Assembly (NCBI GenBank): GCA_002269645.1
Contig: NIVC01003885.1
Location: forward strand, 7,799-71,798
Source: Macrostomum lignano
Taxonomy: Eukaryota
Reading direction: 5' to 3'
DNA: 64,000 nucleotides
Part shown: piece by piece, positions 19,601-59,249 of the stretch
Position numbering within the stretch: position 1 is the stretch's first letter
Layout of the letters: the number at the start of each line of letters is the position of its first letter
Position numbers and translations under genes: made by a program
Notes under the pieces: generated by a model
The model's database searches: none
What the model was told of the DNA's origin: nothing
Seen by the model: only the letters and a program-made list of their open reading frames with translations

Positions 19601-20353
19601 CAAACAGCGAATTATATGGCCGGAACGGATTTGCAAGCAAAAAATCAAAATTTCTAAAGCAAAACAAATGCGAGCATGCGCTTATAGCTTCATTGTTTCT
19701 ATTTGTTTTAAAAACAAAAGTCGCACAAATAAACAAAAATTATTTCGGCAGTGAAAAAAATATTGAAAATTTTACCTTCCGTTGCGACACTGGAGTGACA
19801 CTAATTTCGCTGCTGTAGCTTAGCAACGCTTGTCTGGCACTCGCCTTTCAGGTGATTTTTTTAGAAAATAATTTTGTTCAGCAAAAAGTATCGAATTATT
19901 AACTTTAATCACATTTAAACCTAAAAACGGTTAATGGCCAGTTAATATGTGCGAAAGGTTTTGTTTTTCAATTTGGTGCTGCCTGCCGAAAGCCTAGGAA
20001 ATTAATTTTTTGTTTTAATATGGTGCTTTCGCTTCAAATCCAATCTAATAACGTACGAGTATTTAATATGAAATTACCTGTCCTTGACTTTTAAACCATA
20101 GAAATGCGAACTATTTTGTTTTATTGGATACGATGGGAAAAGTTAATGAATTGTTTTTTTACATTTAAAAAAAACTTTCCACATCGACACGTATTATACT
20201 GTATATGCATCTGTTACCAAAAGTTGCACCCACCCACAACAGGAGTTCTCCTCAACTTGTCTCACCGCTTTTAATGCAAGAGTGGAAGAAATGAGAGGGG
20301 TGTAGAGATGGCGATAGGGATGGAGAATGGAGGTAAAAAAAAGGCGGAGAAGG

Positions 20354-20393
<40 letters not shown>

Positions 20394-35908: not shown

Positions 35909-36774
35909 ATGAACTTGCGGCCAGTGTGCCCCAATGGCCAGTACTTACCGCCGCAGTTTTATGCCGCCTCGGCGGCTGCAGCCGCAGCAGCTGGCGCCCC
36001 ATTGCCCCTAGCAACAGTTGCTAGCAGCATCCCTGGCGGTCTAGTTGCCATGCCAACAGTGACAAGCGCTGCTGGTCTGCAGTATGTCATGCTGCCTCAG
36101 CAGCAGCAGCAACTGCAACATCAGCAGCAACAACAGCTGATGCTTCAGCAAGCTCAGGCTGCGGCCGCTGCTGCCTCGCTGTACAACCCAGCTGGAGGAC
36201 ACGGGATGCTGACTAATCCCCTTCATCAGCTGATGCTAGCCCAGGCCCAGCAGCAGCAGCAGCAACAGCAACAGCAGCAACAGTTTCTGCTAGCCCAGAA
36301 CTACTATGCGCAGCAGCTGGCTGCCGCAGCGGCAATCTCTCAGGCCCAGCAGCAGCAGCAACAGCAGCAGGCACTGCAGTTACAGCAGTTTCACCAGCTT
36401 CAGCAGCACCTGCAGGCGCAGCATCTGCTTCATCAGCATCATCTGCAGCAGCAGCAGCTGCATCAGCAGCGCAATCATCATTCGTCATCGTCAATGAAAG
36501 GCTACAGCGGAGGTCCTGGCACGCCCGGCCATGCGTCAGCCGTGTCCAGCGCAGTCACGACTCCCCGACCGCAGTCCTCCATTGACGTGGCCGGAGCTGC
36601 GGCCGCCACCGCTGCTGCTGCTTCTGCTGCGGCTTCGACTTCAACAGCAGCTGAGTTGCCGAGCTCCATCTCTGATGAGGACGGCTTAAAGTCCTCGCCG
36701 GAGCAGCAGCAGCAACAGCAGTCTACGAGATGGCAGCGGCTTGTAGATGACAATGGATGCGTTTCGTATCGCAG
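35909..36774 (+). CDS. MBD5: MBD5-like exon 1
   Basis: ATG 35909; CGC AG|gtaatt, phase 2. Confidence 0.85.
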
Positions 36775-39700
36775 GTAATTTATTAAATCATTTCTGTTAT
36801 GCCTGCATATTCTATATATAATACAGAGCCTCTATTATTGAATTGGACTGTAAATCTGTCTATTTCTTTTGTATATCCTTATCTCCGTTTATATTCATAC
36901 TCCATAGAGACTAACTTATATACATTTTTTGGATAAATAATATCGTCTGTCTTTGTTTATCGGCTTGTTATTGCGTAAGTTCTTTTCTTTGGATGAACCA
37001 ACTTGTAATTGTGTTGTTTATCTGTGCTTAGAGTAATAACATATGAGACAGGTTATTATTATAAGTTATCTTCAAGTTGGCGCTAAAATTGATCTTGAAT
37101 TTGGCGCTAAAATCAGTCTTCTTTTGCGCTTAAGTCTATGTTCGTTTGGCGCTAAAGTTAATATTCAATTTGGCGCTTAAATTAATAATCTTTTGTTAGT
37201 ATATAAGACATATTTTCTTGACTTATCTAAATTCAAATTTCGGTCGAATCAATTTAGGATTTTTTTAAGTTGCTTTTTTCACTTTTGTAGTCGCTACCGT
37301 CTACTGTTATGAGTAGGGCGGATAGCGCAGTGTTAGTTTTACTTTCAGGCATTTTAGGTTCACTCTCAGTCTCCACACTCAAGGCTTTGGAATGGTAATG
37401 TTATAATTCTTCTTTCATTTCCTGCAGCTCTTATAATTGGCGCATTGGGGATCTGGGTGTATTGGGGATCTGGGTGTATTAAGGATCTGGGTGTATTGAG
37501 AATCTGGGTGTATTGGGGATCTGAGTGCATTGAGGATCTGGGTGTATTAAGGATCTGGTGTATTGAGAATCTGGGTGTATTGGGGATCTGAGTGCATTGA
37601 GGATCTGGGTGTATTGGGGATCTGGGTGTATTGAGAATCTGGGTGTATTGAGAATCTGGGTGTATTGGGGATCTGAGTGCATTGAGGATCTGGGTGTATT
37701 AAGGATCTGGTGTATTGAGGATCTGGGTGTATTAAGGATCTGGTGTATTGAGAATCTGGGTGTATTGGGGATCTGGGTGTATTGAGGATCTGGGTGTATT
37801 AAGGATCTGGTGTATTGAGAATCTGGGTGTATTGGGGATCTGAGTGCATTGAGGATCTGGGTGTATTAAGGATCTGGTGTATTGAGAATCTGGGTGTATT
37901 GGGGATCTGAGTGCATTGAGGATCTGGGTGTATTAAGGATCTGGTGTATTGAGGATCTGGGTGTATTAAGGATCTGGTGTATTGAGAATCTGGGTGTATT
38001 GGGGATCTGGGTGTATTGAGGATCTGGGTGTATTAAGGATCTGGTGTATTGAGAATCTGGGTGTATTGGGGATCTGAGTGCATTGAGGATCTGGGTGTAT
38101 TAAGGATCTGGTGCATACATGCGCAACAGTCGGCCGAGTCGGCCGATCCGGCCGACTGATTTGGCAGCCAACCAAGGAAGTCGCAAAAATGCCCATCCAA
38201 AAAATACCCACGCAGTAGTACTAAGTAGCTGACGAGGCATTTTTGCCTGATAAGACAGTCATAGTTACTCCCGCCGTTTACCCAAAGTTGCGTTAATTTT
38301 GCTTTAGGGTTTTTTTACATGTAAGTCGCATTTTTGGCCAAAAACTACGTCGCATTTTTGTTAAAACTAAGTCGCACGGCCGACCGAATTTTGGACGTTG
38401 CGCATGTATGATCTGGTGTATTGAGAATCTGGGTGTATTGGGGATCTGAGTGCATTGAGGATCTGGGTGTATTAAGGATCTGGTGTATTGAGAATCTGGG
38501 TGTATTGGGGATCTGAGTGCATTGAGGATCTGGGTGTATTGGGGATCTGGGTGTATTGAGAATCTGGGTGTATTGAGAATCTGGGTGCATTGAGAATCTG
38601 GGTGTATTGAGAATCTGGGTGTATTGGGGATCTGAGTGCATTGAGGATCTGGGTGTATTAAGGATCTGGTGTATTGAGAATCTGGGTGTATTAAGGATCT
38701 GGTGTATTGAGAATCTGGTGTATTGGGGATCTGAGTGCATTGGGGATCTGGGTGTATTGAGAATCTGGGTGTATTGAGAATCTGGGTGTATTGAGAATCT
38801 GGGTGCATTGAGAATCTGGGTGTATTGAGAATCTGGGTGTATTGGGGATCTGAGTGCATTGAGGATCTGGGTGTATTGGGGATCTGGGTGTATTGAGAAT
38901 CTGGGTGTATTGAGAATCTGGGTGCATTGAGAATCTGGGTGTATTGAGAATCTGGGTGTATTGGGGATCTGGGTGTATTGAGAATCTGGGTGTATTGGGG
39001 ATCTGAGTGCATTGAGGATCTGGGTGTATTAAGGATCTGGTGTATTGAGAATCTGGGTGTATTAAGGATCTGGTGTATTGAGAATCTGGTGTATTGGGGA
39101 TCTGAGTGCATTGGGGATCTGGGTGCATTGAGGATCTGGGATCAATTCCATGGGCACATGGGATTCCATAATCTTGCATATCAACAATTATTTGTCAAAA
39201 TAGTTCTGAAATGTGTTGAAAATCTGTGTATTAAAACTAATAATTTTACAACTAATGCCTATTTTATATGCTACTTAATCGTATTGCATCACCCTTTGGG
39301 GCCGCCGAGGTTCGCCAGCAGTGAGTGTCTTGACTTGCACAACTATATTTATTAATATTATATTAAATTATATTTTGTGTTCGTTCCGTTTTTTGGCCTT
39401 GGTAAAGATATTTAATTTAAGCAGAGTTTTTAAAAAAAAAGTACATTGTGTCCCGGCTATCCCTTGCAATCAATAAATGCTACTCAAAGCAGGACTCGGC
39501 AGCATTCAGTCGGCTCAGCAGCATTCGGTACGCTCTCTAACTGCTAATTAATTATGTTAATTAATTAATTAAAGCAGCTCTTTCTTGCCACGAGAAGGGT
39601 TGAGACCAAGTGGCCTTGGTTTGCCAACAAAGAAATCTGTCTTTTAAATATCCTTACAATACTACTTAATATATATATCGTTCATTTCTATGTATAAAAG

Positions 39701-42474
39701 ACACACAAACAGCGTAGTGGCTTGTTGATTTCATTTTCTCAATATTCATCATATATATGCATTTGTATTTATTGTCAAAGATTGAAACGCGTAGTGTGAC
39801 TCTTTGCACCCAACAAGCTCTCTTTATGTGTTTGTTTACTAATCAGTTTTTTACCAACTTTTTACTGACCGTTGCTACCTGCCTATAATTTTGGTAATAC
39901 TGCCTTTGTTGGATTAATTGAATTTGGTCGTGTAACTTTATAATTATTTATCCTAGTGGTACACTGCAGCTCTTGACTTTTGTGAATGATATAACAAGCA
40001 TTATAATTTATTAATTAATCACTACACTGCCGACACACGCCGCACACTTTGCGACTTTGGCCCAGTTAATTACGTACTTAACATAATCGGATTAGAACTA
40101 AGTGTTTTTAAGTGTGCGCTTCAAGTAGTTCTTTTATTGTGTGTGCTTGCGCGTATGGTCTTCCCAAACCACCAACTCCCAGGCATTCGCAATATTCCCT
40201 CCGCATATAATTATTCAAATTGTTTGTTATATTTTGCTTTTTCTTTCATTTCTTAAGTGTGTGACACTTAGGTTTTGCTGCAATCTGCTTATCAAATCAG
40301 TCATCTCCAGGTATTTTTGGCCTCGAGAGACTGACCTGTTTGTTTCCTTCTGTTGAGCCATAGAAATCTATCATCTTGACCCATAGGAAACCTTTGACTT
40401 TAGGTTTAAGACCCTTTTGTAGTCAGTGCTTCTGCTAGTGGGTCAATGTGCTGGGTCAAGATCCCCGCTCCTTGACCCTCATTCAGTCAGTGGGTCAGGA
40501 ATCCCCAAACATTGACCCTCATTTAGCCAGTGGGTCAGGAATCCCCACACCTTGACCCTCATTCAGTGGGTCAGGAATCCACACACCCTGACCCTCATTC
40601 AGTCAGTGGGTCAGGAATCCCCACACCTTGACCCTCATTCAGTCAGTGGGTCAGGAATCCACACCATGACCCTCATTCAGTCAGTGGGTCAGGAATCCCC
40701 ACACCTTGACCCTCATTTAGCCAGTGGGTCAGGAATCCCCACACCTTGACCCTCATTCAGTCAGTGGGTCAGGAATCCCCACACCTTGACCCTCATTCAG
40801 TTAGTGGGCCAGGAATCCCACACCTTGACTTCATTCAACCAGTGGGTCAAGAATCCACACCATTGACCCTCATTCAGTCAGTGGGTCGGGAATCCACACC
40901 CTTGACCCTCATTCAGTCAGTGGGTCAGGAATCCCCACACCTTGACCCTCATTTAGTCAGTGGGTCAGAAATCACCACACCTTGTCCCTCATTTAGCCAG
41001 TGGGTCAGGAATCCCCACACCTTGACCCACCGGCAGATAGTTTCACTATGGCGATTCACATCTGCTCAACTCTCTGTCCTCAATCGTCTGCTCTCCGGCC
41101 ACTCTCACAATCTTAAATCCTCCCACCTGCTCCCTGTCAACTCGCCCAGTCATTAATCTGATTTCCCACTTGACTCCGTCAGCTGCTCAGGCGAGCTTTT
41201 GTCAAGCGCCGACGCCGTGCGTGGCTACCTCAGCCGCCCCGATGCCTGCCTGTGCGCCCTGCCGCTGGCCTGCGACCTTCGTCAACGACGTTCTCGACAG
41301 CGACGTCGACAGGCCGACGAGCAGCAAGACGGCGGCGCCGAGACTTCAACGGTAGAGGACGCGGCCGAAGACTCCGATGAAGCAGTTACGCTGCCAGAGG
41401 ATTCCGCCGAAGCTCTGGAAGCCGCCAGACGGCTGTTCAACTTCCGGCCAGACAGTCCCGCTCTGTGGCCGCCGCCGCTGCCAGCTGAGGAGCAGCAGAG
41501 GCTGGAGACTTGCCGGAGCGCCAAGCGGCTGGAGTTGAAGCGGGCAGCGGACTCGGCTGTCGCGGCTGAGGATGAAGAGGCGGCGAAGAAATCAAAGGAG
41601 GCTGAGGTGGGTCATCTCTGACAAGTATTTACTAGTGTAGGGCAGGGGTCGGAAAAGTTTTTAATCTCGAGGGAGGAGAAAGAGAGAGGAGAGAAGAGGA
41701 GAGGAGGGGAGAAATGAGAGAGAGGAGAAGAGAAGAATGGAGAGGAGAGGAGAAGAGAGGTGATAAGGAGAGATGCGAGAAAGAAGAGAAAAAGCTGAGA
41801 AAAGCGGGCCGGATAGAGGAGAGTCTTTGCCTTCCCCTGATATCGGGGGGGGGGGGGCACTAATAGACACGCTCATACGCTGGGGTACACTGTGTGCGGA
41901 GGTTCGTGTTGAGCAAGAGTCGAACAATTAGCATCTGTGTTCCATTCCTTTTCAGACAGCCGAACCAGACCCCAGCGACGCGGCGCAGGATCTGTCATCT
42001 GGGGCAGCTGCTGCTGGGTCATGCCAAGCAGAATCCGGTGCTGCAGCAGAAGAGAAGCTCAACGAAGAAGAACCGGATGACCTTGAAGCCAGCGCCGAGA
42101 GCGTCAATGTGATCGCCCCGCGCCGGGTTGCCACTCCGGAGTCCCGCCTGCTCGTAGCTGGCAGCTCCGTCACCTGGGTGTCCGGCCCCCTAGCAACGCA
42201 GACCGCTCCCGTGCAGGCCTGGGCCGGCTCTGCTAGCCGGCATCGCCACGCTTCCAACGGCTGTTTTCCTGGCGCCCCGTCGATGCCGCTGCAGCAGCCG
42301 CCGCTGGGACGTCAGCGAGCTCCGTCCGCTCCGGATGGTCGGCCAACGCAACTCGCCGTTGTGATGTCGCCAAAATCGCTGATGAGCAGGGAATTCCTGC
42401 CTGCTGCAGTCGCCCTGCCAGAGGCTGCGGCTGATGGAGCGCAGCTGGGACCGGATGGGGATGCAAATCCCTGA
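35909..42474 (+). CDS. MBD5: MBD5/MBD6-like protein (three coding exons, ~602 aa): poly-Q/A N-terminus, split MBD domain, possible degenerate PWWP
   Basis: The spliced junction gives RWQRLVDDNGCVSYR|SCSGELLSSADAVRGYLSRPDACLCALPLAC, matching the MBD5 MBD as I recall it ([44 protein letters not shown]). All phases are consistent. Confidence 0.8.
37448..39141. repeat. 17-bp minisatellite with a ~67-bp higher-order repeat
   Basis: Monomers atctgggtgtattgggg / atctgagtgcattgagg / atctgggtgtattaagg / atctggtgtattgaga recur in order. Confidence 0.97.
38114..38410. mobile_element. hAT-like MITE (297 bp) inserted in the satellite
   Basis: Perfect 14-bp TIR CATACATGCGCAAC; perfect 8-bp TSD atctggtg. 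Confidence 0.93.
40470..41028. repeat. ~40-bp minisatellite
   Basis: (ccttgaccctcattcagtcagtgggtcaggaatccccaca)n. Confidence 0.97.
41183..41606 (+). CDS. MBD5: MBD5-like exon 2
   Basis: ccgtcag|C TGC...GAG|gtgggt. Confidence 0.85.
41956..42474 (+). CDS. MBD5: MBD5-like exon 3
   Basis: ccttttcag|ACA; open to TGA 42472-42474. A donor follows at 42488 and an acceptor at 42665. Confidence 0.75.
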   Translation, partial: TAEPDPSDAAQDLSSGAAAAGSCQAESGAAAEEKLNEEEPDDLEASAESVNVIAPRRVATPESRLLVAGSSVTWVSGPLATQTAPVQAWAGSASRHRHASNGCFPGAPSMPLQQPPLGRQRAPSAPDGRPTQLAVVMSPKSLMSREFLPAAVALPEAAADGAQLGPDGDANP

Positions 42475-42518
42475 CTGACTGGCCTGCGGTGAGTGCTGGG
42501 GCTGACAGACTGACAGAC

Positions 42519-42553
<35 letters not shown>

Positions 42554-43065
42554 GCTAAAAGTCTAACAAACCGTTCCCTTCGTAGTGAAATTATTGTATT
42601 TTTCATTATTCAACCTACACTACTCGTGTCAGTAGAAATGTAGAAATATCGCTATTTATTTTCAGAATGGCAGCTTGGCGACCTAATGAATTGGGTTGAG
42701 AAAGATTAGAAATTTAACTGCCTCTGGCGAGTTTTCCGTGTGCGAATTCTCCCCCTGACCTACAAAAGTCCGACTCGGCCTCTGCTGCACTCACTTCCTC
42801 ATTTTAATTCCCGTTTAGACTAAATGCTTCATATTATAGTTTGTTATTGCGTTTCGAAATTTTCTGAAAGCTTTTTGTATCCTCTATATATATATATATA
42901 ATGTAAACATGTGTAATGCTGTAAGCCTAACGGAACTTAATACGCTATTCCAATCACATGCATACAGGTAGTTTTTTGCTTTGTCTAATCTGTTCTATCT
43001 ATAAAAAATAGACATATTTATTATATATTATGTGTTATCATAAAAGGAATAAACTTTGACTGCAA

Positions 43066-43652
43066 CTAAGACAGACAGACAGACAGACAGCAAGACCAAC
43101 TTTAAGAAGGACACTGAAACAGACACTGAGACAGACACTGAGATAGACACTGAGACAGACACTGAGACAGACACTGAGACAGACACTAAGACAGACACTG
43201 AGACAGACACTGAGACAGACACTGAGACAGACACTGAGACAGACACTGAGATAGACACTGAGACAGACACTGAGACAGACACTGAGACAGACACTAAGAC
43301 AGACACTAAAACAGACACTGAGACAGACACTGAGACAGACACTAAAACAGACACTGAGACAGACACTGAGACAGACACTAAAACAGACACTAAAACAGAC
43401 ACTGAGACAGACACTGAGACAGACACTAAGACAGACACTAAAACAGACACTGAGACAGACACTAAAACAGACACTGAGACAGACACTGAGACAGACACTA
43501 AAACAGACACTGAGACAGGCTCTAAGACAGACACTGAGACAGGCTTTAAGACAGACACTGAGACAGGCTCTAAGACAGACACTGAGACAGGCTCTAAGAC
43601 AGACACTGAGACAGGCTCTAAGACAGACACTGAGACAGGCTTTAAGACAGAC
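43066..43652. repeat. 12-bp minisatellite derived from (AGAC)n
   Basis: (agacagacactg)n; (GACA)n also at 42504-42553. Confidence 0.97.
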
Positions 43653-46600
43653 ACAAGTCTTCAAGAGTAGAATGTTAGGTAATTCTGCATCTCAATGTTT
43701 TGTCTATTCTCTGAAAAAAATGTTCTTATGTATAATAAAATAATAATCAGTTTAACTTGTTTTGTAGTAAAGTGCATGGTTGAAAATCAAAGCATATTTA
43801 TCATTGTCATTTGCTAAAATCGGCCTCACTTCAGTGCCATAGTTTGTGTTATAAAATAATACGCCATATGAATAACATTTTCTAGCAGCACTACTGCTCA
43901 CTGATGTATTTGGCTTTTTTCATCTCGACCGGCCTTACCGTGAAAATGCGTTAATTAAACAAAATTACTAATAGTACGTCAAATTGACTTTTTTATTGTT
44001 GCAGAATCTGATTTTGATTTGCTTTTTTGTCTCGTCCTTTCAGTTTTTTCTTCCTCTCTTTCTCTCTCACGTCTCCGTTTCCTGTTATTTTTCCATTGCT
44101 TGTGGAAAAATAATAAATTTTGCACAAACTTTAATTACACCATGTAGTTGTGCGCGCTGTTGTTTTTACTTTCACGTGCGGTTTTTTTTCGATTGTCTGG
44201 ATGGAGAAGAAATGATTGATTAATTTAAACAATTTAATAAAATGTAAGTTGTTACAAATTGTTAATAATTTGTAATGTCATTTTATAGGCACGATGGAAT
44301 TTATTATATCTGCAAAAAAATCAAAGCGATTATATATGTTCAATGTTCTTTTTTGTTGTTTTTTGTGTGAAAATTGCAATACGTGTGCATTTTTGCTTGG
44401 GTTAACTGTCTTTAGATAGCGAAAAAGTTATAGTAATTATCAACTCGTTATGTAGCTTGTAAATTTAAATTAACGATTTCTATAACAAAAATTTTCCGCG
44501 TTATCTTGTTGTTTGAGTTTGTCTGTTCTCATCTCTGAATTGTTTATTCAATATTGTCTCAAATTGATTGAATTTTCGGTTATTGCAGACAGCTTATGCT
44601 AGCCAATGCGACACACAACACACAGAGTGCAGGCGGCGCGTGTGAATTTATGTTTTGTTTGTTTGTTTCTTTTCTTTTTTCTGCTTTCCCTTAAAAATAT
44701 GGCGTATTAATATTATATTAGTCTGTGAAAAACTATTATTTAACTACGAGTGGTGTTGCAAAGTTTTTGCACTTTGCGTGTTTCGACACAAATGTCCTAC
44801 TGAGGTGACCTTTTAGCCTACAACTCTTGCATATCTGCTCGATTAGATTGTTGAATTGCACAAAGGAACGATTCGAAGTGCTGAGTAAAACTTTTAACAA
44901 AATTTTATTTGTTTTTAGCACGGGTTTTATAAGAGCTAATTCATTATCCATTCAATAGTGCAGATTTGCAGAGTTTTGGCTAAAGTTTGTCAATTTTCGG
45001 GGAACTTTTGCAACACAACTCGTATCTATATACCTGTATTTGTGTAATCAAATATATATAATTATTACATTAGATCACTTTCACTTCACACACGCAAGCA
45101 AAGCAAAAAAATCAAATTTGATCAATTCGTATTTCTGTCTTTTTGTCGTCTGTGTTTGAATTTTCTGGCATGTAGATGTACATGTACTTGTGTACACTGC
45201 CCCAGCAGTGAGACAACTAAGTGTAGTGTAGTTATCTTAGTTGGGTTCGAATTTCATTGATCTTTAACCTTATTTGGCAGCCGGTGGTGATATAAGCTGG
45301 TGTATGAAAATGCCTTTGGATTGTGGCCAACAGGTGTATGATATGGAAAGTTCACACTAGTCCATAGTCCATTTCATACACCTTACAGTGTACTCGGCAT
45401 AACTTTTTTAGATAAGAACCTCCTACTAAACTGCAACTCGGTCTCTGTATTCAGCTGTATTGCTTGTTTTGTAGGCTTACATGTGTGCGGTACGTGCGCT
45501 AGCAGCTCTCTTTATCTCTGGATTGAGACCCACGAAGCAGAATTTGGTTCAAAGAGTGACAATTTATCACTGAATTTCCTGACTCACTAACAGGTCGAAT
45601 CCGTGTTGCTATAGTTAGAGTTTTGGTGCTACTCATGATCCTAGACTTTAGGTGGGAGTCAATGGGGGGTCATGACCTCTCCAGACGGCCCACCATTAAA
45701 ATTTTCAATCTTCATTTTTTACAATTATCAGAGTTATGATATTTAGTAGTAAGGTAAATATGCGGTAGGAATAGACCTAAAATCTAAAGTCCCTCTTGTG
45801 TCGCCAAAATTTACACCAAGTAGCTTCAAGTTCCCCCAACAGCTGCGAAAGCAAAAGCAGAGCTCAAGTGTGCTGCTTTACTCCAACTGAAAGAATGTTG
45901 GCAAGAATATACTACTCACTTTGACTTACTAAACCAAGCCACTAATAGAGAACCAACGGTCCAGATTATTAGGCAGCAAAACCTCTTTGTTACATCGCTT
46001 AACTAAGCCAGTAAGACTTAAGGGGTTGGGCCCTGGAGGTGGAGGTTGCAGATTTGTTTGTTAAAGAACGTATCGATTCAATATAGTGAAAGAATAAATG
46101 GGGCTATCCAGGCCTTTTAACGAGGGGCCCGTGTGGGCTTGCTGACTAACGCAAGACTAACACATTCGCAAATTACAAAAGCGAATGCCTTATACTACTA
46201 CTGAAATGCAAACGTTTTTAATGTACCCAATTGAATGGAAAGGACAATTGAAGGTCGATTTGTTTAGTATATATTTAACGTGTATATTCAGGTTTCCGTT
46301 CATTTAAAGAGAAAAAATATAAGTCAAGTGAAAACCAATTCAATTAATTCATCCTTGTTTTCCATGTTAGGTCTCCATAAATGGCACTACTTTGTCATGG
46401 AAATTCTAATATATTCTACGTAATGCATACAGATAAAACTAAAGATTCTTTATATTCTCTAGCTTTTGAATTTCTACTTTACATTCTTAAATACTTAACC
46501 ATCAATGTCCATCATACTCAACTGTTCAGTCTGTTCTTTCTGTTTCTTTTTCTATATGCGGTTAGGTTTTAAATACAACTTCATACATGCAGCTACACGC

Positions 46601-46925
46601 ACTATACTACTGAACCAAATTCACGCCACTGATATTCTTGCACACGCGTAGTATATAATAAAATCGGAGGGAAAAAGCGTCAAAAAATTCTCCGTTTCAT
46701 CGCCAGTCAGAAATTCTGTCAGCGCCCGTGTGCAACGAAGACCACTCTACGAATTAAATTTTGACCGACGTCTGGAATCATCTCAGCCTTTATTCATCAA
46801 ATCAACCGTGTATTTCTGCTATGTAAAGAGATTCGTGGATTTCATGTCCTTTTTGCTATTCTTTGCAACTCTCAACTGGCAGCAACTGCCAACGTTCGAC
46901 ACTGGGAGGTTGCGGAAAGTACATT

Positions 46926-47078
46926 ATGAGCAAAGTCTCGTTTCGAGCCAGAGCTTTAGACTCCAATCGACCTCTGCAACTGCATTTTGACCATGAAATC
47001 CCAGATCTCTCCGACTATGCATCAATCAGCCGATCTGTGCCTCTTCTGCCTTCTGGCATGGAGAAGGACGAAGAAACG
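46926..47078 (+). CDS. EPC1: EPC exon 1
   Basis: ATG 46926; ACG|gtacta, phase 0. Confidence 0.93.
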
Positions 47079-50000
47079 GTACTACTTTGCTTATGTACAA
47101 TTCTTATTATTCCATGACTTTTGATGGCATTTTAATATTTATTAGGACTTATTATTAGTTTTGCATGCACCAGCGCGTAATAAGTCCTAATATTTTAATT
47201 GGAAATATACTTAGTCTAAAACAAAGTAGATCCGTCTAAGTCAGACGTGTACATTGTGTTTGTGGCACTTATTTAAAGCAAAATAAAAACGATTTTGATG
47301 TTTGGTGTTCAATAGCTTGCCTGTTTTCTGCATAAGTTCTTGGTGGCTTTGAAGTTTGTCAAAAACATTATTCCTTCAGTGTCCTATAATATTGTGCCTT
47401 CTGCAATTTTTTCTTTTAGATAAAAAATCTATTCACTCAATTGTTATGTCAAATGACCTATAGTTCACTACAGAACTTTTCTCCAATTAAATTTGGTCAT
47501 TACTACATTTAATTCTGTCTAACAGTCTTATACACCTTAGACATTTCTAAAAAAGTTTAAAGGATTTGGTCATGACTAAAAAAATCAGGTATGTTATCAT
47601 TATCGCAATATGATGATATTAATCTATCTTATTTTAAATTAAACTCAAGAGAATTAACAATTAACTTAGTCCTAATAAACTTTAATCATTTTTATTCACT
47701 GGGTGATATATTAGCAGGTACTAGGGGGCCCTATTAGAATAAATGTTGAAAATCTATAGATGCGCGCTTTAGAATAAAGTAAGGTCAAATTATTTTATCT
47801 TGCTTTAGCATTATCAAAGACAGTTTGTAAAAACAATTTATGCAAAATTGTTGATTGCAATCTATCAAAATTAAAATTTGCTAACTTTCTGAAATTGAAA
47901 TTTTCCAAAAACAAAATTTAGAAAAATAGTTTAATATGACCAACACTCATATTTTGCTTTTGGTTTGCTTATGCAAAACTAAATACATGTATATGTAGTT
48001 AGAAATTAGTTTATTTTTAGCTACTTTTTTAAACACTTCCAAAATTTTGATTTCTAAATTTTTCAAAATCAAAATTTTTTCTTTATAATTCTAAACTTTA
48101 GAAAATCAAAATTTTGGAACAACTCTAAGCATTATAAATGATGAGTGTATTAGGCCCTTTTCCATGTATATTTATTTGTTGGAGTAGCAGCCAGTAGAAA
48201 AAGGGCAGTGTGCGCGTGCAAGTGCTGCGTACTTGTATGTATTGCATTTAAAAAAATTTCAAAAGAATGCCAAATGCTGTCTGCAGTTTTACAACTTTAT
48301 CTTATAGGGCTAGGGGGAGGGAGGCTAATGATAATGTTATTAGTTATATTCTAAAAATGCGATATAATTCAAAGTAAAATATAGCCAATAATATTTAGCT
48401 TTAAAGCAAGTCTAACTAAATAGTTGGTTGGCTCTAATAATAGGGGCCTAGCCTGTCATTATTTGTGATATTAATAGATTAAAAAATAAAGTATAACTAT
48501 AACATTGATTTACAAAGAACAGTTTATTTTCATCTAAATAGACATAATCATTGAATAAGCTACATTGTTTTGTTTTAACAATGTTAACTTTTTTATAATT
48601 ATGTTACCATTGCCATGATAAAGATATTATCTATATAGTGCCATACTAATAATTGGTTTGTTTATTCTTTTTGTAGCAACCTAGGCCATGTAATAAAAGA
48701 AACTGGTTCCCAACCAATTGGTTTTTTAATTAATATTAATGCCTTATTAGAGCCATAGTTAGAAAGATAGCTTTTTACTGAAAATAACAAGCAAATTTAG
48801 CCTGGGTCAGAGCAAATTTAGGCAAAGTAAAGGTAGGTTCAAGGAAAATTGGGACAAGGTAATAGCAGTTACGGTTAGGTTAGAGACCAAGTGTGATTAA
48901 GAGCAACAAAGTAGTTGACTGGTTTCTTAAGCTAAGCCATGTTCCTCATTTGTTAGCCAATATTGCTATGTGTATCTAGATAAAAATTATTGAATGACTG
49001 AATTGAATAGACTTTAAAATCTTTAAAATACCAACAAATTAACTAAAGATCTTAGTACTAATCAAGATAATTATGCTTATGCTCTAGCATATTGACTTAA
49101 AAAATCATATCTTAAAATTAGACCTTTGATGCAAGTGCAAGTACTAGCAAAAACCTAGGCTAGGTTTTTTATGCAATAATAAATAGGAGGCTATAGCCTA
49201 GTAGTATTCTGTAGTACTCTTATATCCTAGCAGGCTAGACCCAAATCCAAGTGCAATAGCATTAATTTGAAACTAAATTTGAGTCTTGGCTTAGGTCTGC
49301 TTATACAATTAATGCTATTGATACTTAAAAGCCAACCACAAAAAGACGAAAAGATATTGTAGCTGCTGCCTAGTTACCTAGTTAAGGTGGCTCTATATTT
49401 CTATGAGAGCATACATGTGCAACCTTGGGATTCACTTGGCCTTTTCTATTGGCAACACATACATGTAAGTCACTATTGGCTGAAAGCAGTCATGTGACTA
49501 CTATTGTCCAATAGCAACTTACATGTATGTGCCTATGTTTGACTGTATATGTATAATGGGATTGGAAGAATGGGCAGAGTGCACCAGAGTGCACACAGCT
49601 CCCCACCTCTGATAAAAAATCGATTGCCTTATAGATAGATTTCCAGATCAAAACTGGGATTTATTTGATCTTGAAGATTAGATGCTACTATAAAATAACT
49701 TTCAAGAATCTAAGTTGTAACATAAATAAGACATGTTGGAAATTTCATATTCACCAATCAGAAATGATTGCAATATTTAACAGTTAATCAAAATCAAAAG
49801 TACTTGAAAAGCTTTCATCCCTTGTGCCTGTCTCAGCGTCAACTCACCTTACCCAACTTTCACCCGAACAGGAACACCATCTTCAAGAGGCACTGTTCGC
49901 CAGCAGCAGTTCAAGTCAACAGATCTTCACGCCATCCCCATACCCGAGATTGACGAGAATGCCAACAAGTTTAAGAGTTTGTACCACGCACTGTGCCGCG

Positions 50001-51373
50001 AGGGCACATTCCGCATGCCTAAGCAGTACATCCGCGTGCAGGCGTTCTCCTTGGATCACGGCGATAATGAAACACCAGATTACGATCTGGACAGCGAGGA
50101 CGAGGCCTGGCTATCAGCCTCGAAGCTCAGCTTGCCACCAATCGATCTGGAACGAATGCTGGAACAGTTGGAACGGTACAGCGATCACACTGTTGTCAGC
50201 TTGAATGAGGCCAAGGCTCTGTTGAAAAAAGATGACGGATTAACTACAGCCGTGTACGATTATTGGCTAGCTAAGCGGCTTAAGCACGGCCAACGGTTGA
50301 GTCTGGCTATCAAAGCCGATCGGAGAGACGGCTCGTCGAACAATGACCCGTATGTGGCGTTCCGGCGCCGTACAGAGAAGATGCAGACTAGAAAGCACAG
50401 GAAAAATGACGAGGCCAGCTATGAGAAGATGCTGCGCCTTCGCCGCGACATGGACCGGGCCTGTTCCCTCATTGAACTGCTGGTCAGGCGCGAGGAGACC
50501 AAATCCGCTCTGTTAGACACCGAACTGCGCGTCTTCCAACGTCGCTGGTCGGCTCGCGATTTTGACGCCAGCCAGCTGCAGGCTGCCGCCGTTGCTGCCG
50601 CGGCCGCTGCTGCCGCTAAAAAGTCTGCAGCAGCAGCATCAGCAGCGGCCGCTTCCTCATCCTGGCAGCAGCAGCATCAATTGAATCACCATCAGCAACA
50701 GCATCAACAGTCAGCGGCGCATCAACGCGGCTCCACAGCCAAGCGGGCGAGGAGGCGGCCGCCACCGTTGCCAACTCCGCCCGAAGTTGCAGCCGCTGAA
50801 GCCGCCGCCGCCGCCGCCGCTCCTCCCTTGTTTGTCGACGATGATTCTTTACTGCCTGGCGGTGACAACGGCGGTCGATTTGTCTGGTGCAGGCGTCGGG
50901 TTGGCGCGGTGTACGCGCCAGCCAAGCCGTTGACCGACGCTGAAGACTCTGCAGCGTTGCCACCGTCGGGAACTCAGCCCAGATCGGCTTTCGCTGGCGT
51001 CTACGGACGCCGAATGTTCAGCCTGACCCGACTGCCCTGCGTTGTTGGCTCCGAGTCGTCAACAGCATCTGCATCCTCCTGTCATCTGTCTTCCTCGGCC
51101 GGCTCGCGTCATTGCCGACCCTTAGCGGCCTATGTCGGTTTGCGGCTGGGCCGCGGCGGGCGCCTGCTGATTGACAGGCTGTCCGGGCCGCCAGGTGTGG
51201 ACGCCTACCTGTCCGGCTGGGAGGCCCGTCAGTCTGGCCTTGAGCTGCCAGACGCTCCGCCAGCCACCGTGTGCGCCCACTCTGGCGAACTGGTGGAAGA
51301 AGATCCTTTGTTCGATCTGCGACTGCCAGCCTACGAGCTGGCCGCCACCTCAAACAATGGCACTGTTGGATAA
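46926..51373 (+). CDS. EPC1: Enhancer of polycomb homolog (EPC1/2; NuA4/TIP60 subunit), two exons, 1-nt frameshift near 49900
   Basis: Exon 1 reads MSKVSFRARALDSNRPL...LPSGMEKDEET. Exon 2 reads EHHLQ.../AIPIPE...FRMPKQYIRVQAFSLD..PDYDLDSED...DPYVAFRRRTEKMQTRKHRKNDEASYEKML...GRGGRLLIDR. These are the EPL1 and E_Pc_C motifs. Confidence 0.95.
49872..51373 (+). CDS. EPC1: EPC exon 2
   Basis: cccgaacag|GAA CAC CAT; frame switches at ~49899-49901; TAA at 51373. Confidence 0.93.
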
Positions 51374-55672: not shown

Positions 55673-56037
55673 ATGTCGTTAGAAACTCTTTGTTGCTTAT
55701 TTTCTGTTGCACTCTTGTCTGTGGAGCTCCTGCATGGCCTCAACTCCGAGCCCGCTGGGTTTTTTTAAGTTCGGCCCGCACGCCACGAAACCGGCTGTGC
55801 CCGCGTTTGTGCAGAAGCCGGGTGAGTTGCCGCTGCAACTGTGCACCGACACCTGCAAGTGCGGCCGTTTCTGCTGCTTCGGCGCTCAGTTCGGCGAGTA
55901 CTGCTTCTGCGGCTCGGCCTACGGCTCTGTCGGAGTCGCTCCTGCCTCCCAATGCAATTTCCAATGCGTCAGGAATGCATCGCAGGTGTGCGGTGGTCGC
56001 GATAGAAATTCAATCTATGGAATCATCTGCCCGAAAT
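55673..56037 (+). CDS. Secreted WSC-domain protein, first exon; frameshift at the T7 run 55760-55766
   Basis: Signal peptide MSLETLCCLFSVALLSVELLHG. In the +1 frame: LCTDTCKCGRFCCFGAQFGEYCFCGSAYG..VAPASQCNFQCVRNASQVCGGRDRNSIY (WSC cysteine pattern). Donor T|gtaagc at 56037. Confidence 0.8.
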
Positions 56038-56063
56038 GTAAGCGAATGCCATGTTTATCAGAT

Positions 56064-58395
56064 AGGAAAAGAAGCGCTTGCCTAAGTGGTGCATTGTCAG
56101 GCTCAGCAGTATGACACAGGAAAATCTCGCATCTTTCTGAGTGAAGAGTCTCTTCAGAGTGAAAAGTCAGATATGGGAGAGAGAGGGAGTGAAAATCTCT
56201 CCCGTATCTAAATCTTCACTCTCTCTCCCATATCTGACTCTTCACTCTCCCATATCTGACTCTTCACTCTCTCTCCCATATCTGACTCTTCACTCTCCCA
56301 TATCTGACTCTTCACTCTCCCATATCTGACTCTTCACTCTCCCATATCTGACTCTTCACTCTCCCATATCTGACTCTTCACTCTCCCATATCTGACTCTT
56401 CACTCTCCCATATCTGACTCTTCACTCTCCCATATCTGACTCTTCACTCTCCCATATCTGACTCTTCACTCTCCCATATCTGACTCTTCACTCTCCCATA
56501 TCTGACTCTTCACTCTCTCTCCCATATCTGACTCTTCACTCTCCCATATCTGACTCTTCACTCTCCCATATCTGACTCTTCTCTCTCCCATATCTGACTC
56601 TTCACTCTCCCATATCTGACTCTTCACTCTCCCATATCTGACTCTTCACTCTCCCATATCTGACTCTTCACTCTCCCATATCTGACTCTTCACTCTCCCA
56701 TATCTGACTCTTCACTCTCCCATATCTGACTCTTCACTCTCCCATATCTGACTCTTCACTCTCCCATATCTGACTCTTCACTCTCCCATATCTGACTCTT
56801 CACTCTCCCATATCTGACTCTTCACTCTCTCTCCCATATCTGACTCTTCACTCTCCCATATTTGACTCTTCACTCTCCCATATCTGACTCTTCTCTCTCC
56901 CATATCTGACTCTTCAGTCTCCCATATCTGACTCTTCACTCTCCCATATCTGACTCTTCACTCTCCCATATCTGACTCTTCACTCTCCCATATCTGACTC
57001 TTCACTCTCCCATATCTGACTCTTCACTCTCCCATATCTGACTCTTCACTCTCCCATATCTGACTCTTCTCTCTCCCATATCTGACTCTTCAGTCTCCCA
57101 TATCTGACTCTTCACTCTCCCATATCTGACTCTTCACTCTCCCATATCTGACTCTTCACTCTCCCATATCTGACTCTTCACTCTCCCATATCTGACTCTT
57201 CACTCTCCCATATCTGACTCTTCACTCTCCCATATTTGACTCTTCACTCTCCCATATCTGACTCTTCACTCTCCCATATTTGACTCTTCACTCTCCCATA
57301 TCTGACTCTTCACTCTCCCATATTTGACTCTTAACTCTCTCATATTTGACTCTTCACTCTCCCATATTTGACTCTTCACTCTCCCATATCTGACTCTTCA
57401 CTCTCCCATATTTGACTCTTCACTCTCCCATATCTGACTCTTCACTCTCCCATATTTGACTCTTCACTCTCCCATATTTGACTCTTCACTCTCCCATATT
57501 TGACTCTTCACTCTCCCATATTTGACTCTTCACTCTCTCTCTCCCATATCTGACTCTTCACTCTCTCTCTCCCATATCTGACTCTTCACTCTCCCATATC
57601 TGACTCTTCACTCTCCCATATTTGACTCTTCACTCTCCCATATTTGACTCTTCACTCTCCCATATTTGACTCTTCACTCTCTCTCTCTCCCATATCTGAG
57701 TCTTCACTCTCTCTCTCCTATATCTGACTCTTCACACTCTCTCTCTCTCCCATATCTGACTCTTCACTCTCACTCCAATATCTGAATTAATTAGTGACTT
57801 AATCTGCGAATATGGACAGACCAGACGGTAAACCTTAATTTTGTCCTTAATCTGATTTGTGCAAAGACGCATAAACATAATTGTCTATGTTTTAAGATAG
57901 CTAGATAATAATAATAAGCTCTTAGATCTTGTTAATATGCAGCTATAAAAATTGACGGGTGCAGGATATTCGAAAAAGTTGAAGTGGAAAATCTGTTGGC
58001 ACGCCATGGTACAGTCCACAAGAATGAGCGTTGCGTGGCTAAGGAGCCATAACTACATTGCCGTTTAGTGCATTGGTTGCCGCATTCAAATCCCGCTATA
58101 TAGAGAGCCCATTTTTAGTTTTGTTGGATCTGGCAGACAAAACAACAGACCATGCATGTGCAATCTTTTTAATGGAAATGATTAGTGACCCCTACTATCT
58201 GCATCAATTAAAATCACCCTTCCCATTCGAAAAATATATTTTTCTCTTAAGTAAATCCGTTGCGCTTGTAGAAGCTTTTTCAGCAGTTTTTTTTAATGAT
58301 GGATTATAATCGAAGGTGCGAAAAATGTGAGATTTTCCTGTGTCATATACTGCTGAGCCTGACAATGCACCACTTAGGCAAGCGCTTCTTTTCCT
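56064..58395. mobile_element. Possible foldback-like element: ~70-bp inverted repeats enclosing a 22-bp satellite
   Basis: 56064-56132 is almost exactly the reverse complement of 58325-58395 (2-nt indel, 1 substitution). No TSD seen. Confidence 0.45.
56157..57785. repeat. 22-bp minisatellite (~70 units)
   Basis: (cccatatctgactcttcactct)n. Confidence 0.98.
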
Positions 58396-59249
58396 GTTAC
58401 GCATCGCTGTGTTAATTAAAAGTCAACAAAACCAACTGAATATTTCATAGATCAATCAGTATTTCTAACCAAACCCATCTAGGAGGCTTACCTATCGGCT
58501 TAATTTGTTATTAATGAATTTAAGAAGAGGTTTGATGGCTTGACAAGACGCATTTTATTTCAATTTGCCTACAGTCTCATTGTATTTTTATCATTATATT
58601 TCGGAAATATATCGAAATATATTAAATTTCGATCGTAAAATGTTAATATTTCTACTCACAGTAGGCTATCCAGATCAGTCAGAAACTAAATAATTGCATA
58701 TCAATTGGGCAGCCCTAAGTACAATGTTACTGTGTGGCCTTAAAGCCCCTCCAATTTTTTTGCTCTCCTATATATTTTACGCCTGCTTTTGCACTGTGTC
58801 TGAGGGCCTCCGCCTCTATATCTTTGCAGTCTGCAGATGCTGCCAGGCCCACAGGGGGAGGGGGTAGAAGCTAGGGGGCATTTGACGTCATCAAACCGCG
58901 CCTTAATTCGCGCGGTACGTACTTTTTTGTGCAGAGTAACTGCCTATACGACTAGTACTGCGTGTCTAATCGGCTGTAGGAGGCCGTTTGCAGACTTTTG
59001 AAGATTGCGATAGCGATTAATACAGTGTACTTTAACCAGCAGTTCTAATTCTTTTAAATTAACCTTAGAAAAACTAACGGATCAGATTACGTAGTGTAGG
59101 ATTTTACCAGTTGTTCCAGAGGTACACAGGGTGTACATACATGTACTGTACATGTAGTTCTAGCTCGCATCTTATTAGTTAGATTTTTTTGCTAACATGC
59201 AAGTACATAAGCGCACATGTGCTGTAACTTACCACGTGTCTCTTCTTTT

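What the first reader, a model, noticed from the sequence alone, without database searches (positions are those of the whole stretch)
35909..51373. MBD5-like gene immediately upstream of EPC on the same strand: possible ancient microsynteny with human MBD5-EPC2
Seen: an MBD5/6-type MBD gene ends ~4.2-4.5 kb before the EPC ATG, in the same orientation, with no gene recognised between them. Established: human MBD5 and EPC2 are adjacent and co-oriented at 2q23.1; MBD5/6 associate with the BAP1/PR-DUB H2A deubiquitinase; EPC is a NuA4/TIP60 H2A/H4 acetyltransferase subunit. Inference: an invertebrate retaining this linked pair of H2A-directed chromatin regulators would imply deep conservation, possibly through shared cis-regulation or operon-like, trans-spliced co-transcription.
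Basis: partly seen in the sequence, partly recalled or inferred. Interest (0 to 1): 0.8.

Follow-up and report, generated by a model that had tools for sequence, protein, structure and literature searches.

The report
MBD5-like and EPC genes as neighbours
A very diverged MBD5/6-type gene lies 4.45 kb upstream of an Enhancer-of-polycomb gene on the same strand, as MBD5 and EPC2 do in humans; it is probably a leftover of an old gene order, but none of the other invertebrate loci I could inspect shows it.

Summary
On the + strand, a three-exon gene (35909-36774, 41183-41606, 41956-42474; 602 aa) encodes a very diverged MBD5/6-type MBD. An EPC gene follows it (46926-47078, 49872-51373). The 4,451-bp spacer holds no recognisable protein domain, Rfam family or tRNA.

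The MBD call does not rest on Pfam or phmmer, which both miss it. It rests on:
- a profile-profile match to 30 true MBD5/6 N-termini (E 2e-7; z about 14 against shuffles);
- the two zinc-ligand cysteines (C-x-C);
- an intron at the same position and phase as in Saccoglossus, Papilio and one metagenomic MBD5 gene.

EPC is unambiguous (Pfam EPL1; 55% identity to Lottia EPC).

Human gene order is ORC4-MBD5-EPC2-KIF5C. The paralogous regions MBD6-DCTN2-KIF5A and KIF5B-EPC1 suggest the linkage predates the vertebrate genome duplications. However, 16 other EPC loci with at least 5 kb of upstream DNA, including Lottia, Darwinula, Apostichopus, Helobdella and Rhamnusium, carry no MBD5/6 exon. Unrelated genes sit directly upstream in Lottia and Darwinula.

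Passive retention of an ancestral adjacency is the best reading (about 0.55). Coincidence is about 0.25. An operon is unlikely. This would be a modest new example of a known kind, conserved microsynteny.

The parts
35909..36774 (+). MBD5/6-like gene, exon 1. It encodes a long poly-Q/poly-A N-terminal region and then the first half of the MBD (…STRWQRLVDDNGCVSYR). It ends in phase 2 (AG|GTAAT).
   Evidence: hhalign aligns WQRLVDDNGCVSY to the GWQR..V.Y strands of MBD5/6. The donor position and phase are identical to Saccoglossus MBD5-like.
36775..41182 (+). Intron 1 of the MBD-like gene (4.4 kb), mostly minisatellite arrays.
   Evidence: Tandem Repeats Finder reports a 17-nt unit x99 at 37444-39140 and a 40-nt unit x14.7 at 40452-41028. 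The acceptor is CGTCAG|C at 41182/41183.
41183..41606 (+). MBD5/6-like gene, exon 2. It encodes the rest of the MBD (SCSGELLSSADAVRGYLSRPDACLCALPLACDL, a ~38-aa charged insert, then RRLFNFRPDSPALW) and a weak LxxxC…KR motif.
   Evidence: This is the best hit in the window for an MBD5/6 HMM that excludes the window (E 0.0094). Alignment A3 shows Y, C-x-C, L and F-N-F conserved. P0001 is identical.
41956..42474 (+). MBD5/6-like gene, exon 3. A low-complexity C-terminal tail ending in TGA at 42472-42474. No PWWP domain.
   Evidence: The junction KEAE|TAEPD is present in P0001. Pfam finds nothing, and there is no PWWP motif in the window.
42475..46925 (.). Intergenic spacer of 4,451 bp. It is AT-rich and holds a 24-nt minisatellite at 43110-43654. 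The first AATAAA after the MBD stop is at 43048. A pyrimidine-rich AG acceptor-like site lies about 50 nt before the EPC ATG.
   Evidence: no Pfam hit in six frames; no Rfam family or tRNA; poly-A signals, GC, CpG; repeat; sequence before the ATG.
46926..47078 (+). EPC gene, exon 1 (MSKVSFRARALDSNRPLQLHFDHEIPDLSDYASISRSVPLLPSGMEKDEET). It ends in phase 0.
   Evidence: The 51-codon first exon is the same as in Lottia, Helobdella and Apostichopus.
49872..51373 (+). EPC gene, exon 2. It holds the rest of the EPcA/EPL1 region and the C-terminal region in one 1.5-kb exon. There is an apparent 1-nt deletion at about 49901 (…TTCGC·CAGCAG…). The TAA stop is at 51371-51373.
   Evidence: Pfam EPL1 scores 41.4 bits against a cut-off of 25.4. 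It is 55% identical over 283 aa to Lottia EPC, E 5.8e-89. Near-invariant EPC residues lie on both sides of the frame change.

Best explanation
These are two separate, independently transcribed chromatin-regulator genes in head-to-tail order.

The upstream gene encodes a short (602 aa), fast-evolved member of the MBD5/6 (Drosophila SBA) family. In better-studied animals these proteins dock on the PHD finger of ASX/ASXL in the PR-DUB H2A deubiquitinase. The downstream gene encodes Enhancer of polycomb, a NuA4/TIP60 subunit.

The adjacency is most likely a relic of an ancestral linkage that also survives as MBD5-EPC2 on human 2q23.1. I think it was kept by lack of breakage rather than by a demonstrated constraint.

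Shown: the gene models, the family assignments, the adjacency and the empty spacer.
Inferred: common ancestry of the adjacency with the human one, separate promoters, and PR-DUB binding by this diverged MBD.
For: MBD5/6 identity:
- hhalign against 30 genuine MBD5/6 N-termini gives probability 93.6%, E 2.1e-7. With the loop insert removed it gives 96.6%, E 6.5e-10 over 68 columns.
- The real score is 47.6; 200 shuffles give 11.5±2.6 with a maximum of 23.4.
- The C-x-C cysteines, which form the composite zinc site with the ASXL PHD and are specific to MBD5/6 (PMC12713335), are conserved.
- The phase-2 intron in the Ser codon before S-P/C-S-G matches Saccoglossus, Papilio and an ENA contig.
- The generic MBD model does not hit.

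EPC identity.

Adjacency and empty spacer.

Human gene orders:
- ORC4, MBD5, EPC2, KIF5C (PMC7471508).
- DDIT3, MBD6, DCTN2, KIF5A (PMC3990535).
- KIF5B, EPC1 (PMC11203018).
These form a three-way paralogous region, which implies that MBD5/6, EPC and KIF5 were linked before the vertebrate genome duplications (inference).

Chance adjacency of two named genes, in the same order and orientation as in human, is roughly 1e-4 or less per genome for a pre-specified pair. Even after allowing for post-hoc selection and shared ancestral linkage groups, retained ancestral pairs should outnumber coincidences. This is my own estimate. Irimia et al. 2012 (PMC3514665) report 595 such ancestral pairs.
Against: - No other non-vertebrate locus I could inspect shows the pair. 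16 EPC loci with at least 5 kb upstream have no MBD5/6 exon.
- In Lottia the upstream neighbours are a polyprenyl synthase and a serine hydrolase. In Darwinula it is an isochorismatase.
- From my own knowledge, Drosophila sba and E(Pc) are on different chromosome arms.
- No extended synteny is present. The window has an RGS-repeat gene upstream and a WSC-domain ORF downstream, not ORC4 or KIF5.
- The MBD-like protein lacks PWWP. Its 12-aa ASXL-binding motif is degenerate (K61 equivalent is L; the third Cys is displaced by two residues), so orthology and function are less secure than for EPC.
- The source organism is unidentified. I could not place it phylogenetically beyond 'not a vertebrate': its EPC is only 52-55% identical to mollusc, chelicerate and vertebrate EPCs.
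Confidence: 0.55

Rival explanations
1. Coincidence. The two genes became neighbours independently in this lineage, or are neighbours by chance within a conserved chromosome-scale linkage group. The resemblance to human 2q23.1 then has no historical meaning.
For: No MBD5/6 exon lies within the flank available upstream of EPC in five named invertebrates or in 11 metagenomic contigs; in Lottia and Darwinula an unrelated gene sits directly upstream. No further synteny in the window. The pair was picked post hoc from all neighbouring pairs. If gene order is random within conserved linkage groups, a few tens of chance-shared adjacencies per genome are expected (my estimate).
Against: The same order and the same relative orientation as in human cut the chance expectation about four-fold. 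The vertebrate paralogous regions show the linkage is already older than the 2R duplications. Independent loss of an unconstrained adjacency in several phyla is the normal outcome, so the negative loci are only weak evidence.
Confidence: 0.25
2. Selectively maintained unit. The adjacency is ancestral and is kept because the genes share cis-regulatory elements or a chromatin domain. This could be a co-regulated pair, or a regulatory block with enhancers for one gene inside the other. It would coordinate PR-DUB and NuA4/TIP60 dosage.
For: Both products act on H2A-centred chromatin states (PMC9523997 for MBD5/6 with BAP1/ASXL; the EPC role is established knowledge). Conserved pairs as a class are enriched for co-regulation or regulatory blocks (PMC3514665). 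The pair survives here in a genome that has otherwise reshaped both genes: a short MBD gene and an EPC that has lost introns.
Against: The pair is broken in every other invertebrate locus examined, and in Drosophila from my own knowledge. That argues against strong constraint. In Irimia et al. it is 5'-5' (divergent) pairs, not head-to-tail pairs, that are over-represented among conserved pairs. One vertebrate paralogous region kept EPC1 without an MBD gene and another kept MBD6 without EPC. No conserved non-coding sequence could be tested.
Confidence: 0.15
3. Operon-like co-transcription. MBD-like and EPC are made from one primary transcript, and the EPC 5' end is generated by spliced-leader trans-splicing.
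For: The genes share a strand with no intervening gene. A pyrimidine-rich AG acceptor-like site lies about 50 nt upstream of the EPC ATG.
Against: The spacer is 4,451 bp. From my own knowledge, known spliced-leader operons have intercistronic regions from none to about 1 kb. Poly-A signals begin 570 nt after the MBD stop, and a 545-bp minisatellite lies between the genes. None of about 60 EPC mRNA-like metatranscriptome contigs from other organisms carries an MBD5/6 sequence. It is unknown whether the source organism trans-splices at all.
Confidence: 0.03
4. The upstream gene is not a functional MBD5/6 orthologue. It would be a decaying copy, or a lineage-specific protein that keeps only a remnant of the MBD5/6 domain, so the 'pair of H2A regulators' argument does not apply.
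For: Residues that are invariant in the 30-sequence family alignment are replaced: T, K, G, E and P of GTCKCGLECP become ACLCALPLAC. K61, required with C66 for ASXL binding (PMC9523997), is Leu. A 38-aa charged insert sits in the ASXL-binding loop. There is no PWWP. phmmer finds no relative among 1.84 billion proteins. Foldseek is inconclusive.
Against: The reading frame is intact over three exons with canonical splice sites. Composition is exon-like and GC-rich. The zinc-ligand cysteines, the F-N-F hairpin, the Y-L of helix α1 and the ancestral intron are all retained. AlphaFold models the strands and helix α1 at pLDDT 85-92.
Confidence: 0.15

Closest known systems
Human MBD5-EPC2 neighbour pair at 2q23.1 (within ORC4-MBD5-EPC2-KIF5C)
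   Same: The gene families are the same, the order is the same (MBD gene 5' of EPC), the strand is the same for both genes, and no gene lies between them (order from PMC7471508; orientation from my own knowledge).
   Different: The human genes are far larger: from my own knowledge, MBD5 spans roughly 500 kb and is roughly 130 kb from EPC2. Human MBD5 has a PWWP domain and an N-terminal MBD. Here the gene spans 6.6 kb, the MBD starts near residue 270, and there is no PWWP. The ORC4 and KIF5 neighbours are absent from the window.
Conserved ancestral microsyntenic pairs (CAMPs) of Irimia et al. 2012 (PMC3514665)
   Same: Two unrelated genes adjacent in very distant animals. The proposed causes are co-regulation, regulatory blocks or simple retention.
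   Different: A CAMP requires conservation in at least 4 of 11 major lineages. Here only two lineages show the pair (vertebrates and this unidentified animal). I could not check whether MBD5-EPC2 is among the 595 listed pairs, because the supplement is not held.
Drosophila Six-banded (SBA, dMBD5/6) and vertebrate MBD5/MBD6 as PR-DUB subunits (PMC9523997, PMC12713335)
   Same: A non-methyl-binding MBD with an extra loop after helix α1 and a C-x-C that completes a zinc site with the ASX/ASXL PHD finger. The window protein keeps the C-x-C, the helix and the F-N-F hairpin.
   Different: The 12-aa ASXL-binding motif is poorly conserved (K to L, third Cys shifted by two residues). The loop carries a 38-aa charged insertion. 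Binding to ASX is untested.
Spliced-leader operons of nematodes, tunicates and flatworms
   Same: Co-oriented genes with no gene between them.
   Different: The spacer is several times longer than typical intercistronic regions, contains poly-A signals and a minisatellite, and there is no evidence of trans-splicing.

Membership tests
MBD5/MBD6/SBA family | Significant sequence-profile similarity to the MBD5/6-type MBD and not to canonical MBDs | tested here: met
   hhalign against 30 MBD5/6 sequences gives E 2.1e-7, or 6.5e-10 without the loop insert. z is about 14 against 200 shuffles. An HMM built without the window picks exon 2 as the only window hit below E=1. Pfam PF01429 gives no hit at E≤0.1. 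No canonical MBD is found in the PDB at E≤10.
MBD5/MBD6/SBA family | Two cysteines (MBD6 C60 and C62, C-x-C) that form the composite zinc site with the ASXL PHD; absent from MBD1-4 (PMC12713335) | tested here: met
   Both are invariant columns that include the window sequence (…DACLCAL…) in alignments A3 and A5.
MBD5/MBD6/SBA family | 12-aa ASXL-binding motif with K61 and C66 (PMC9523997) | tested here: not met
   KCGLECPLxVxK corresponds to LCALPLACDLRQ. K61 becomes L. A Cys is present only after a 2-residue shift in the hhalign alignment.
MBD5/MBD6/SBA family | MBD5/6-specific loop between helix α1 and the C-terminal F-N-F hairpin | tested here: met
   The loop is present and enlarged by about 38 charged residues. 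F-N-F-x-P and the following W are conserved.
MBD5/MBD6/SBA family | Shared gene structure: phase-2 intron in the Ser codon preceding S-P-S-G | tested here: met
   The window has …CGC AG|GTAAT … GTCAG|C TGC TCA. Saccoglossus has …GTC AG|GTTAGT … TTACAG|T CCA. The same acceptor is seen in Papilio and ENA contig L006.
MBD5/MBD6/SBA family | MBD fold (β-sheet plus helix α1) | tested here: inconclusive
   AlphaFold gives two or three strands plus a helix at pLDDT 85-92. The first Foldseek run is headed by the SETDB2, BAZ2B and MBD2/3/4 MBDs, but at E≥0.6. The trimmed model gives a mixture of WW, peroxidase and MBD hits.
MBD5/MBD6/SBA family | PWWP domain (MBD5 and many invertebrate orthologues; absent in MBD6) | tested here: not met
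   No PF00855 hit in the protein or the spacer. No PWWP motif in six frames of the window. In Papilio a PWWP gene follows the MBD exons.
MBD5/MBD6/SBA family | Reciprocal best hit or phylogenetic placement | tested here: inconclusive
   phmmer against 1.84 billion representatives returns only itself and two spurious bacterial repeat proteins. The word-indexed search returns only P0001. The domain is too short and too diverged for a tree.
Enhancer of polycomb (EPC1/2, E(Pc)) | EPcA/EPL1 domain with the EPC N-terminus (MSKxSFRARALD…) | tested here: met
   Pfam EPL1 scores 41.4 bits (cut-off 25.4). 189 homologues at E≤1e-20, all EPC; the best is Lottia at 55% over 100% of the query. 24 invariant EPC columns are kept.
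Enhancer of polycomb (EPC1/2, E(Pc)) | Conserved first intron after codon 51 | tested here: met
   Exon 1 HSPs cover residues 1-51 in Lottia, Helobdella and Apostichopus, as in the window.
Conserved ancestral microsyntenic pair (Irimia et al. 2012) | Adjacency (≤4 intervening genes) in at least 4 of 11 major metazoan lineages | tested here: inconclusive
   The pair is seen in this window and in human. It is not seen within 5-10 kb in 16 other EPC loci. Flanks were limited to 10 kb, so '≤4 intervening genes' could not be assessed.
Spliced-leader operon | Short intercistronic region; downstream gene trans-spliced to a leader | tested here: not met
   The spacer is 4,451 bp with poly-A signals and a minisatellite. 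Trans-splicing itself cannot be tested without RNA data.

The most novel reading that the evidence does not exclude
The MBD5/6-EPC adjacency is a bilaterian-age, selectively maintained regulatory unit. It would couple the dosage of a PR-DUB accessory subunit (H2AK119 deubiquitination) to a NuA4/TIP60 scaffold subunit (H2A/H4 acetylation), through shared enhancers or a common chromatin domain. That would explain why it survives in both humans and a very diverged invertebrate genome.
Probability: 0.1. Interest if true: 0.6.

Novelty: new member of a known kind. Interest (0 to 1): 0.3.

Why it matters
If the adjacency is truly ancestral, it adds one more pair of unrelated genes whose order has survived since before the protostome-deuterostome split. 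It would also give an invertebrate handle on the 2q23.1 (MBD5/EPC2) neurodevelopmental locus. One could then ask whether the two chromatin regulators share regulatory DNA.

Separately, the gene is an extreme, short MBD5/6 variant. It keeps the zinc-ligand C-x-C but not the rest of the ASXL-binding motif. That makes it a natural test of what is minimally needed for docking on PR-DUB.

As it stands, this is a single-lineage observation of a known phenomenon, so its weight is modest.

Tried and rejected
- Pfam on the spliced MBD protein, and on the insert-free domain, gave no MBD hit.
- phmmer of the MBD region against the PDB gave nothing relevant. The PDB seems to hold no MBD5/6 MBD: a recalled human MBD5 domain hit only WW domains, and the family profile reaches MBD2/3/4 only at E about 1.
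- The word-indexed search with the window MBD returned only the self-match P0001.
- The full phmmer scan of 1.84 billion representatives returned only P0001 and two bacterial repeat proteins, which I judged spurious.
- Pairwise tblastn of family members against the window is weak (best E 0.013). Only profile methods give significance.
- I baited the family with human MBD5 and MBD6 sequences recalled from memory. All conclusions rest on the database sequences that search retrieved, not on the recalled ones.
- Foldseek with two AlphaFold models gave no hit below E 0.49.
- Identifying the organism failed. P0001 is a singleton cluster known only as UniParc UPI0007A1829D, and no contig is on record for it.
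- Context look-ups failed for Limulus, Perca EPC2 and Nucella.
- The Helobdella gene upstream of EPC is co-oriented, but it is poly-N/Q low complexity with no MBD motif, so it is uninformative.
- From the MBD5 side (Saccoglossus, Papilio, ENA contig), the 10-kb flanks end inside or just after the long MBD5 gene and show no EPC.
- Literature: no paper was found that describes MBD5-EPC microsynteny. The Irimia 2012 supplement is not held, and the Robert 2022 supplements do not name the genes.
- I considered a 14-nt 'intron', or a downstream AAG acceptor, to explain the EPC frame change. I rejected the first as too short. The second remains possible, but it would delete the near-invariant EHHLQ motif.

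Full report
**What is there**

The window is animal nuclear DNA, with GC-rich exons in AT-rich, minisatellite-laden introns.

On the + strand I built a three-exon model for the upstream gene. Exon 1 is 35909-36774, exon 2 is 41183-41606 and exon 3 is 41956-42474. It has canonical GT-AG introns and encodes 602 aa. A database protein, P0001 (275 aa, UniParc UPI0007A1829D), is 100% identical and reads across the exon 2/exon 3 junction.

The downstream gene starts at ATG 46926. Exon 1 (46926-47078) encodes MSKVSFRARALD…MEKDEET. Exon 2 (49872-51373) encodes the rest of a 551-aa Enhancer-of-polycomb protein.

The MBD stop and the EPC ATG are 4,451 bp apart.

**Is the upstream gene really MBD5/6-like?**

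Standard tools say nothing:
- Pfam's MBD model does not hit.
- phmmer against the PDB finds nothing.
- An exhaustive phmmer scan of 1.84 billion representatives returns only the self-match and two spurious bacterial repeat proteins.

I then retrieved genuine family members by baiting the database with recalled human MBD5 and MBD6 N-termini. The hits included MBD6 of chimpanzee and birds, MBD5 of fishes, and MBD5-like proteins of Saccoglossus, Asterias and Papilio. I aligned 30 of them without the window sequence.

Profile-profile comparison of that alignment with the spliced window sequence gives:
- probability 93.6%, E 2.1e-7 over 50 columns;
- 96.6%, E 6.5e-10 over 68 columns once a ~38-residue charged insertion is removed.

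The real score is 47.6. Across 200 composition-preserving shuffles the score is 11.5±2.6, with a maximum of 23.4. An HMM built from the same 30 sequences, run over all six-frame ORFs of the window and 86 loci, finds the known MBD exons and then window exon 2. That is the only window hit below E=1.

Two independent characters agree with this:
- The C-x-C pair is conserved. In MBD6 (C60, C62) it completes a zinc site with the ASXL PHD finger and is absent from MBD1-4 (PMC12713335). The Y-L of helix α1 and the F-N-F-x-P hairpin are also conserved.
- The intron that splits the domain lies in the same Ser codon, in the same phase (AG|C or AG|T), as in Saccoglossus, Papilio and an ENA metagenomic MBD5 gene.

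Against full membership:
- The otherwise invariant GTCKCGLECP is ACLCALPLAC.
- The Lys (K61) needed with C66 for ASXL binding (PMC9523997) is Leu.
- The third Cys is displaced by two residues.
- The ASXL-binding loop carries the charged insertion.
- There is no PWWP domain anywhere in the window.

AlphaFold models the strands and helix at pLDDT 85-92, but Foldseek matches are not significant.

I conclude that it is a highly derived MBD5/6-family gene (about 0.85-0.9). Whether it still docks on PR-DUB is open.

**EPC**

This assignment is unambiguous:
- Pfam EPL1 is above threshold.
- There are 189 EPC homologues at E≤1e-20. The best is Lottia at 55% identity over the whole 283-aa query. Limulus, spider, leech, sea cucumber and vertebrate EPCs are at 49-54%.
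- The 51-codon first exon is shared with Lottia, Helobdella and Apostichopus.

The equal distance to molluscs, chelicerates and vertebrates shows that the source is not a vertebrate and has no close relative in the database. I could not identify it.

One oddity stands out. The near-invariant EHHLQ…A motif and the following Q-Q…IPxPE motif lie in different frames, and they are joined only if one base is restored at about 49901 (GC·CAG). This is most likely an assembly indel.

**The spacer**

The six-frame translation of 42475-46925 has no Pfam hit. There is no Rfam family or tRNA. GC stays at 0.30-0.42, while the exons of both genes are at 0.48-0.66.

The spacer contains a 24-nt minisatellite (43110-43654). 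The first AATAAA lies 570 nt after the MBD stop.

**Is the adjacency ancient?**

Human gene order ORC4-MBD5-EPC2-KIF5C is documented (PMC7471508). The other EPC and MBD5/6 paralogues sit next to the other KIF5 paralogues: KIF5B-EPC1 at 10p11 (PMC11203018) and MBD6-DCTN2-KIF5A at 12q13.3 (PMC3990535). I infer that an MBD5/6-EPC-KIF5 neighbourhood existed before the two vertebrate genome duplications.

Outside vertebrates I found no second example.
- Lottia: EPC is flanked upstream by a polyprenyl synthase and a serine hydrolase, and downstream by MCM6.
- Darwinula: an isochorismatase lies upstream.
- Apostichopus, Rhamnusium and Helobdella: no MBD5/6 exon in 7-10 kb upstream.
- A scan of JGI metagenome contigs gave 80 more EPC loci. 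Eleven have at least 5 kb of upstream DNA, and none has an MBD5/6 exon.
- From the MBD5 side (Saccoglossus, Papilio, an ENA contig), the 10-kb flanks end within or just past the much longer MBD5 genes and show no EPC.

These tests have limited reach. Flanks were at most 10 kb, most of the organisms are unidentified, and typical MBD5 genes span tens of kb. They break strict adjacency in at least Lottia and Darwinula. They say nothing about looser linkage.

I found no paper describing this pair as conserved microsynteny.

**Weighing**

For a pre-specified pair, chance adjacency in the same order and orientation is of the order of 1e-4 or less per genome. After allowing for post-hoc selection and for random order within conserved linkage groups, I estimate tens of chance-shared adjacencies per genome, against hundreds of retained ones. 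The matching orientation adds about a four-fold factor. The negative loci take back about three-fold.

That leaves roughly 0.7 that the adjacency is ancestral. About 0.55 of that is passive retention and about 0.15 is constraint-driven. Coincidence gets about 0.25.

Against strong constraint:
- The pair is broken wherever else I could look.
- Two of the three vertebrate paralogous regions lost one partner.
- Head-to-tail pairs are not the class enriched for co-regulation (PMC3514665).

An operon is very unlikely, given the 4.45-kb spacer with poly-A signals and a minisatellite. No RNA evidence exists either way.

**Verdict**

This is a plausible but uncorroborated new example of conserved microsynteny. 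It also revealed an unusually derived MBD5/6 family member. Interest is modest (0.3).

Noticed in passing
window 49895-49905: EPC exon 2 has an apparent 1-nt deletion (…CTGTTCGC·CAGCAGCAG…). The conserved EHHLQEALFA and QQQFKSTDLHAIPIPE are in different frames. This is probably an assembly indel. Use of a downstream AAG|TCA acceptor that skips the EHHLQ motif is an alternative.
   Followed up: partly
window ~14400-30200, minus strand: A large multi-exon gene with at least three or four RGS-domain exons (an RGS22-like architecture), transcribed divergently from the MBD-like gene. ORFs at 14482-14916, 24622-25026 and 26914-27543 hit Pfam RGS.
   Followed up: partly
window 55683-56111, plus strand: An ORF with a WSC domain (Pfam PF01822, E 1.8e-8). 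It is the next recognisable coding sequence downstream of EPC. No kinesin (KIF5) motifs occur anywhere in the window.
   Followed up: partly
window 37444-39140, 40452-41028, 43110-43654: Three large minisatellites: a 17-nt unit x99 and a 40-nt unit x15 inside MBD intron 1, and a 24-nt unit x23 in the spacer. They create long spurious ORFs on both strands.
   Followed up: yes
window 41280-41430 (protein residues ~335-375): A ~38-residue Arg/Glu/Asp-rich insertion sits in the loop of the MBD that binds the ASXL PHD finger in MBD5/6. It is also present in the database protein P0001.
   Followed up: partly
window 9484-9553, minus strand: An Rfam tRNA hit just at threshold (30.1 bits against 29). 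ARAGORN does not call it. It may be a tRNA-derived repeat or pseudogene.
   Followed up: no
window 59180-60250, plus strand: Long tandem repeats give open frames of repeated 'GTEAPSTIRDRGAINHQGQRR'-like units in all three frames.
   Followed up: no
L001 (Lottia gigantea KB202849.1) 20382-25254: In Lottia, MCM6 lies about 5 kb downstream of EPC. From my own knowledge, human MCM6 (2q21.3) is on the same chromosome arm as EPC2. This hints at conserved chromosome-scale linkage even though MBD5 is not adjacent.
   Followed up: no
L005 (Papilio machaon KQ461133.1) 10001-42092; L088 (Rhamnusium bicolor) 6836-7416: Two likely annotation splits. The Papilio 'MBD6' model (123 aa) is followed by a separate 1910-aa PWWP gene that is probably the rest of the same MBD5-like gene. 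In Rhamnusium, the 87-aa gene upstream of EPC encodes the EPC N-terminal exons.
   Followed up: partly
window 49872-51373 compared with L001-L003: The EPC region encoded by at least five exons in Lottia, Helobdella and Apostichopus is a single 1.5-kb exon here. This indicates extensive intron loss in this lineage, apart from the first intron.
   Followed up: partly
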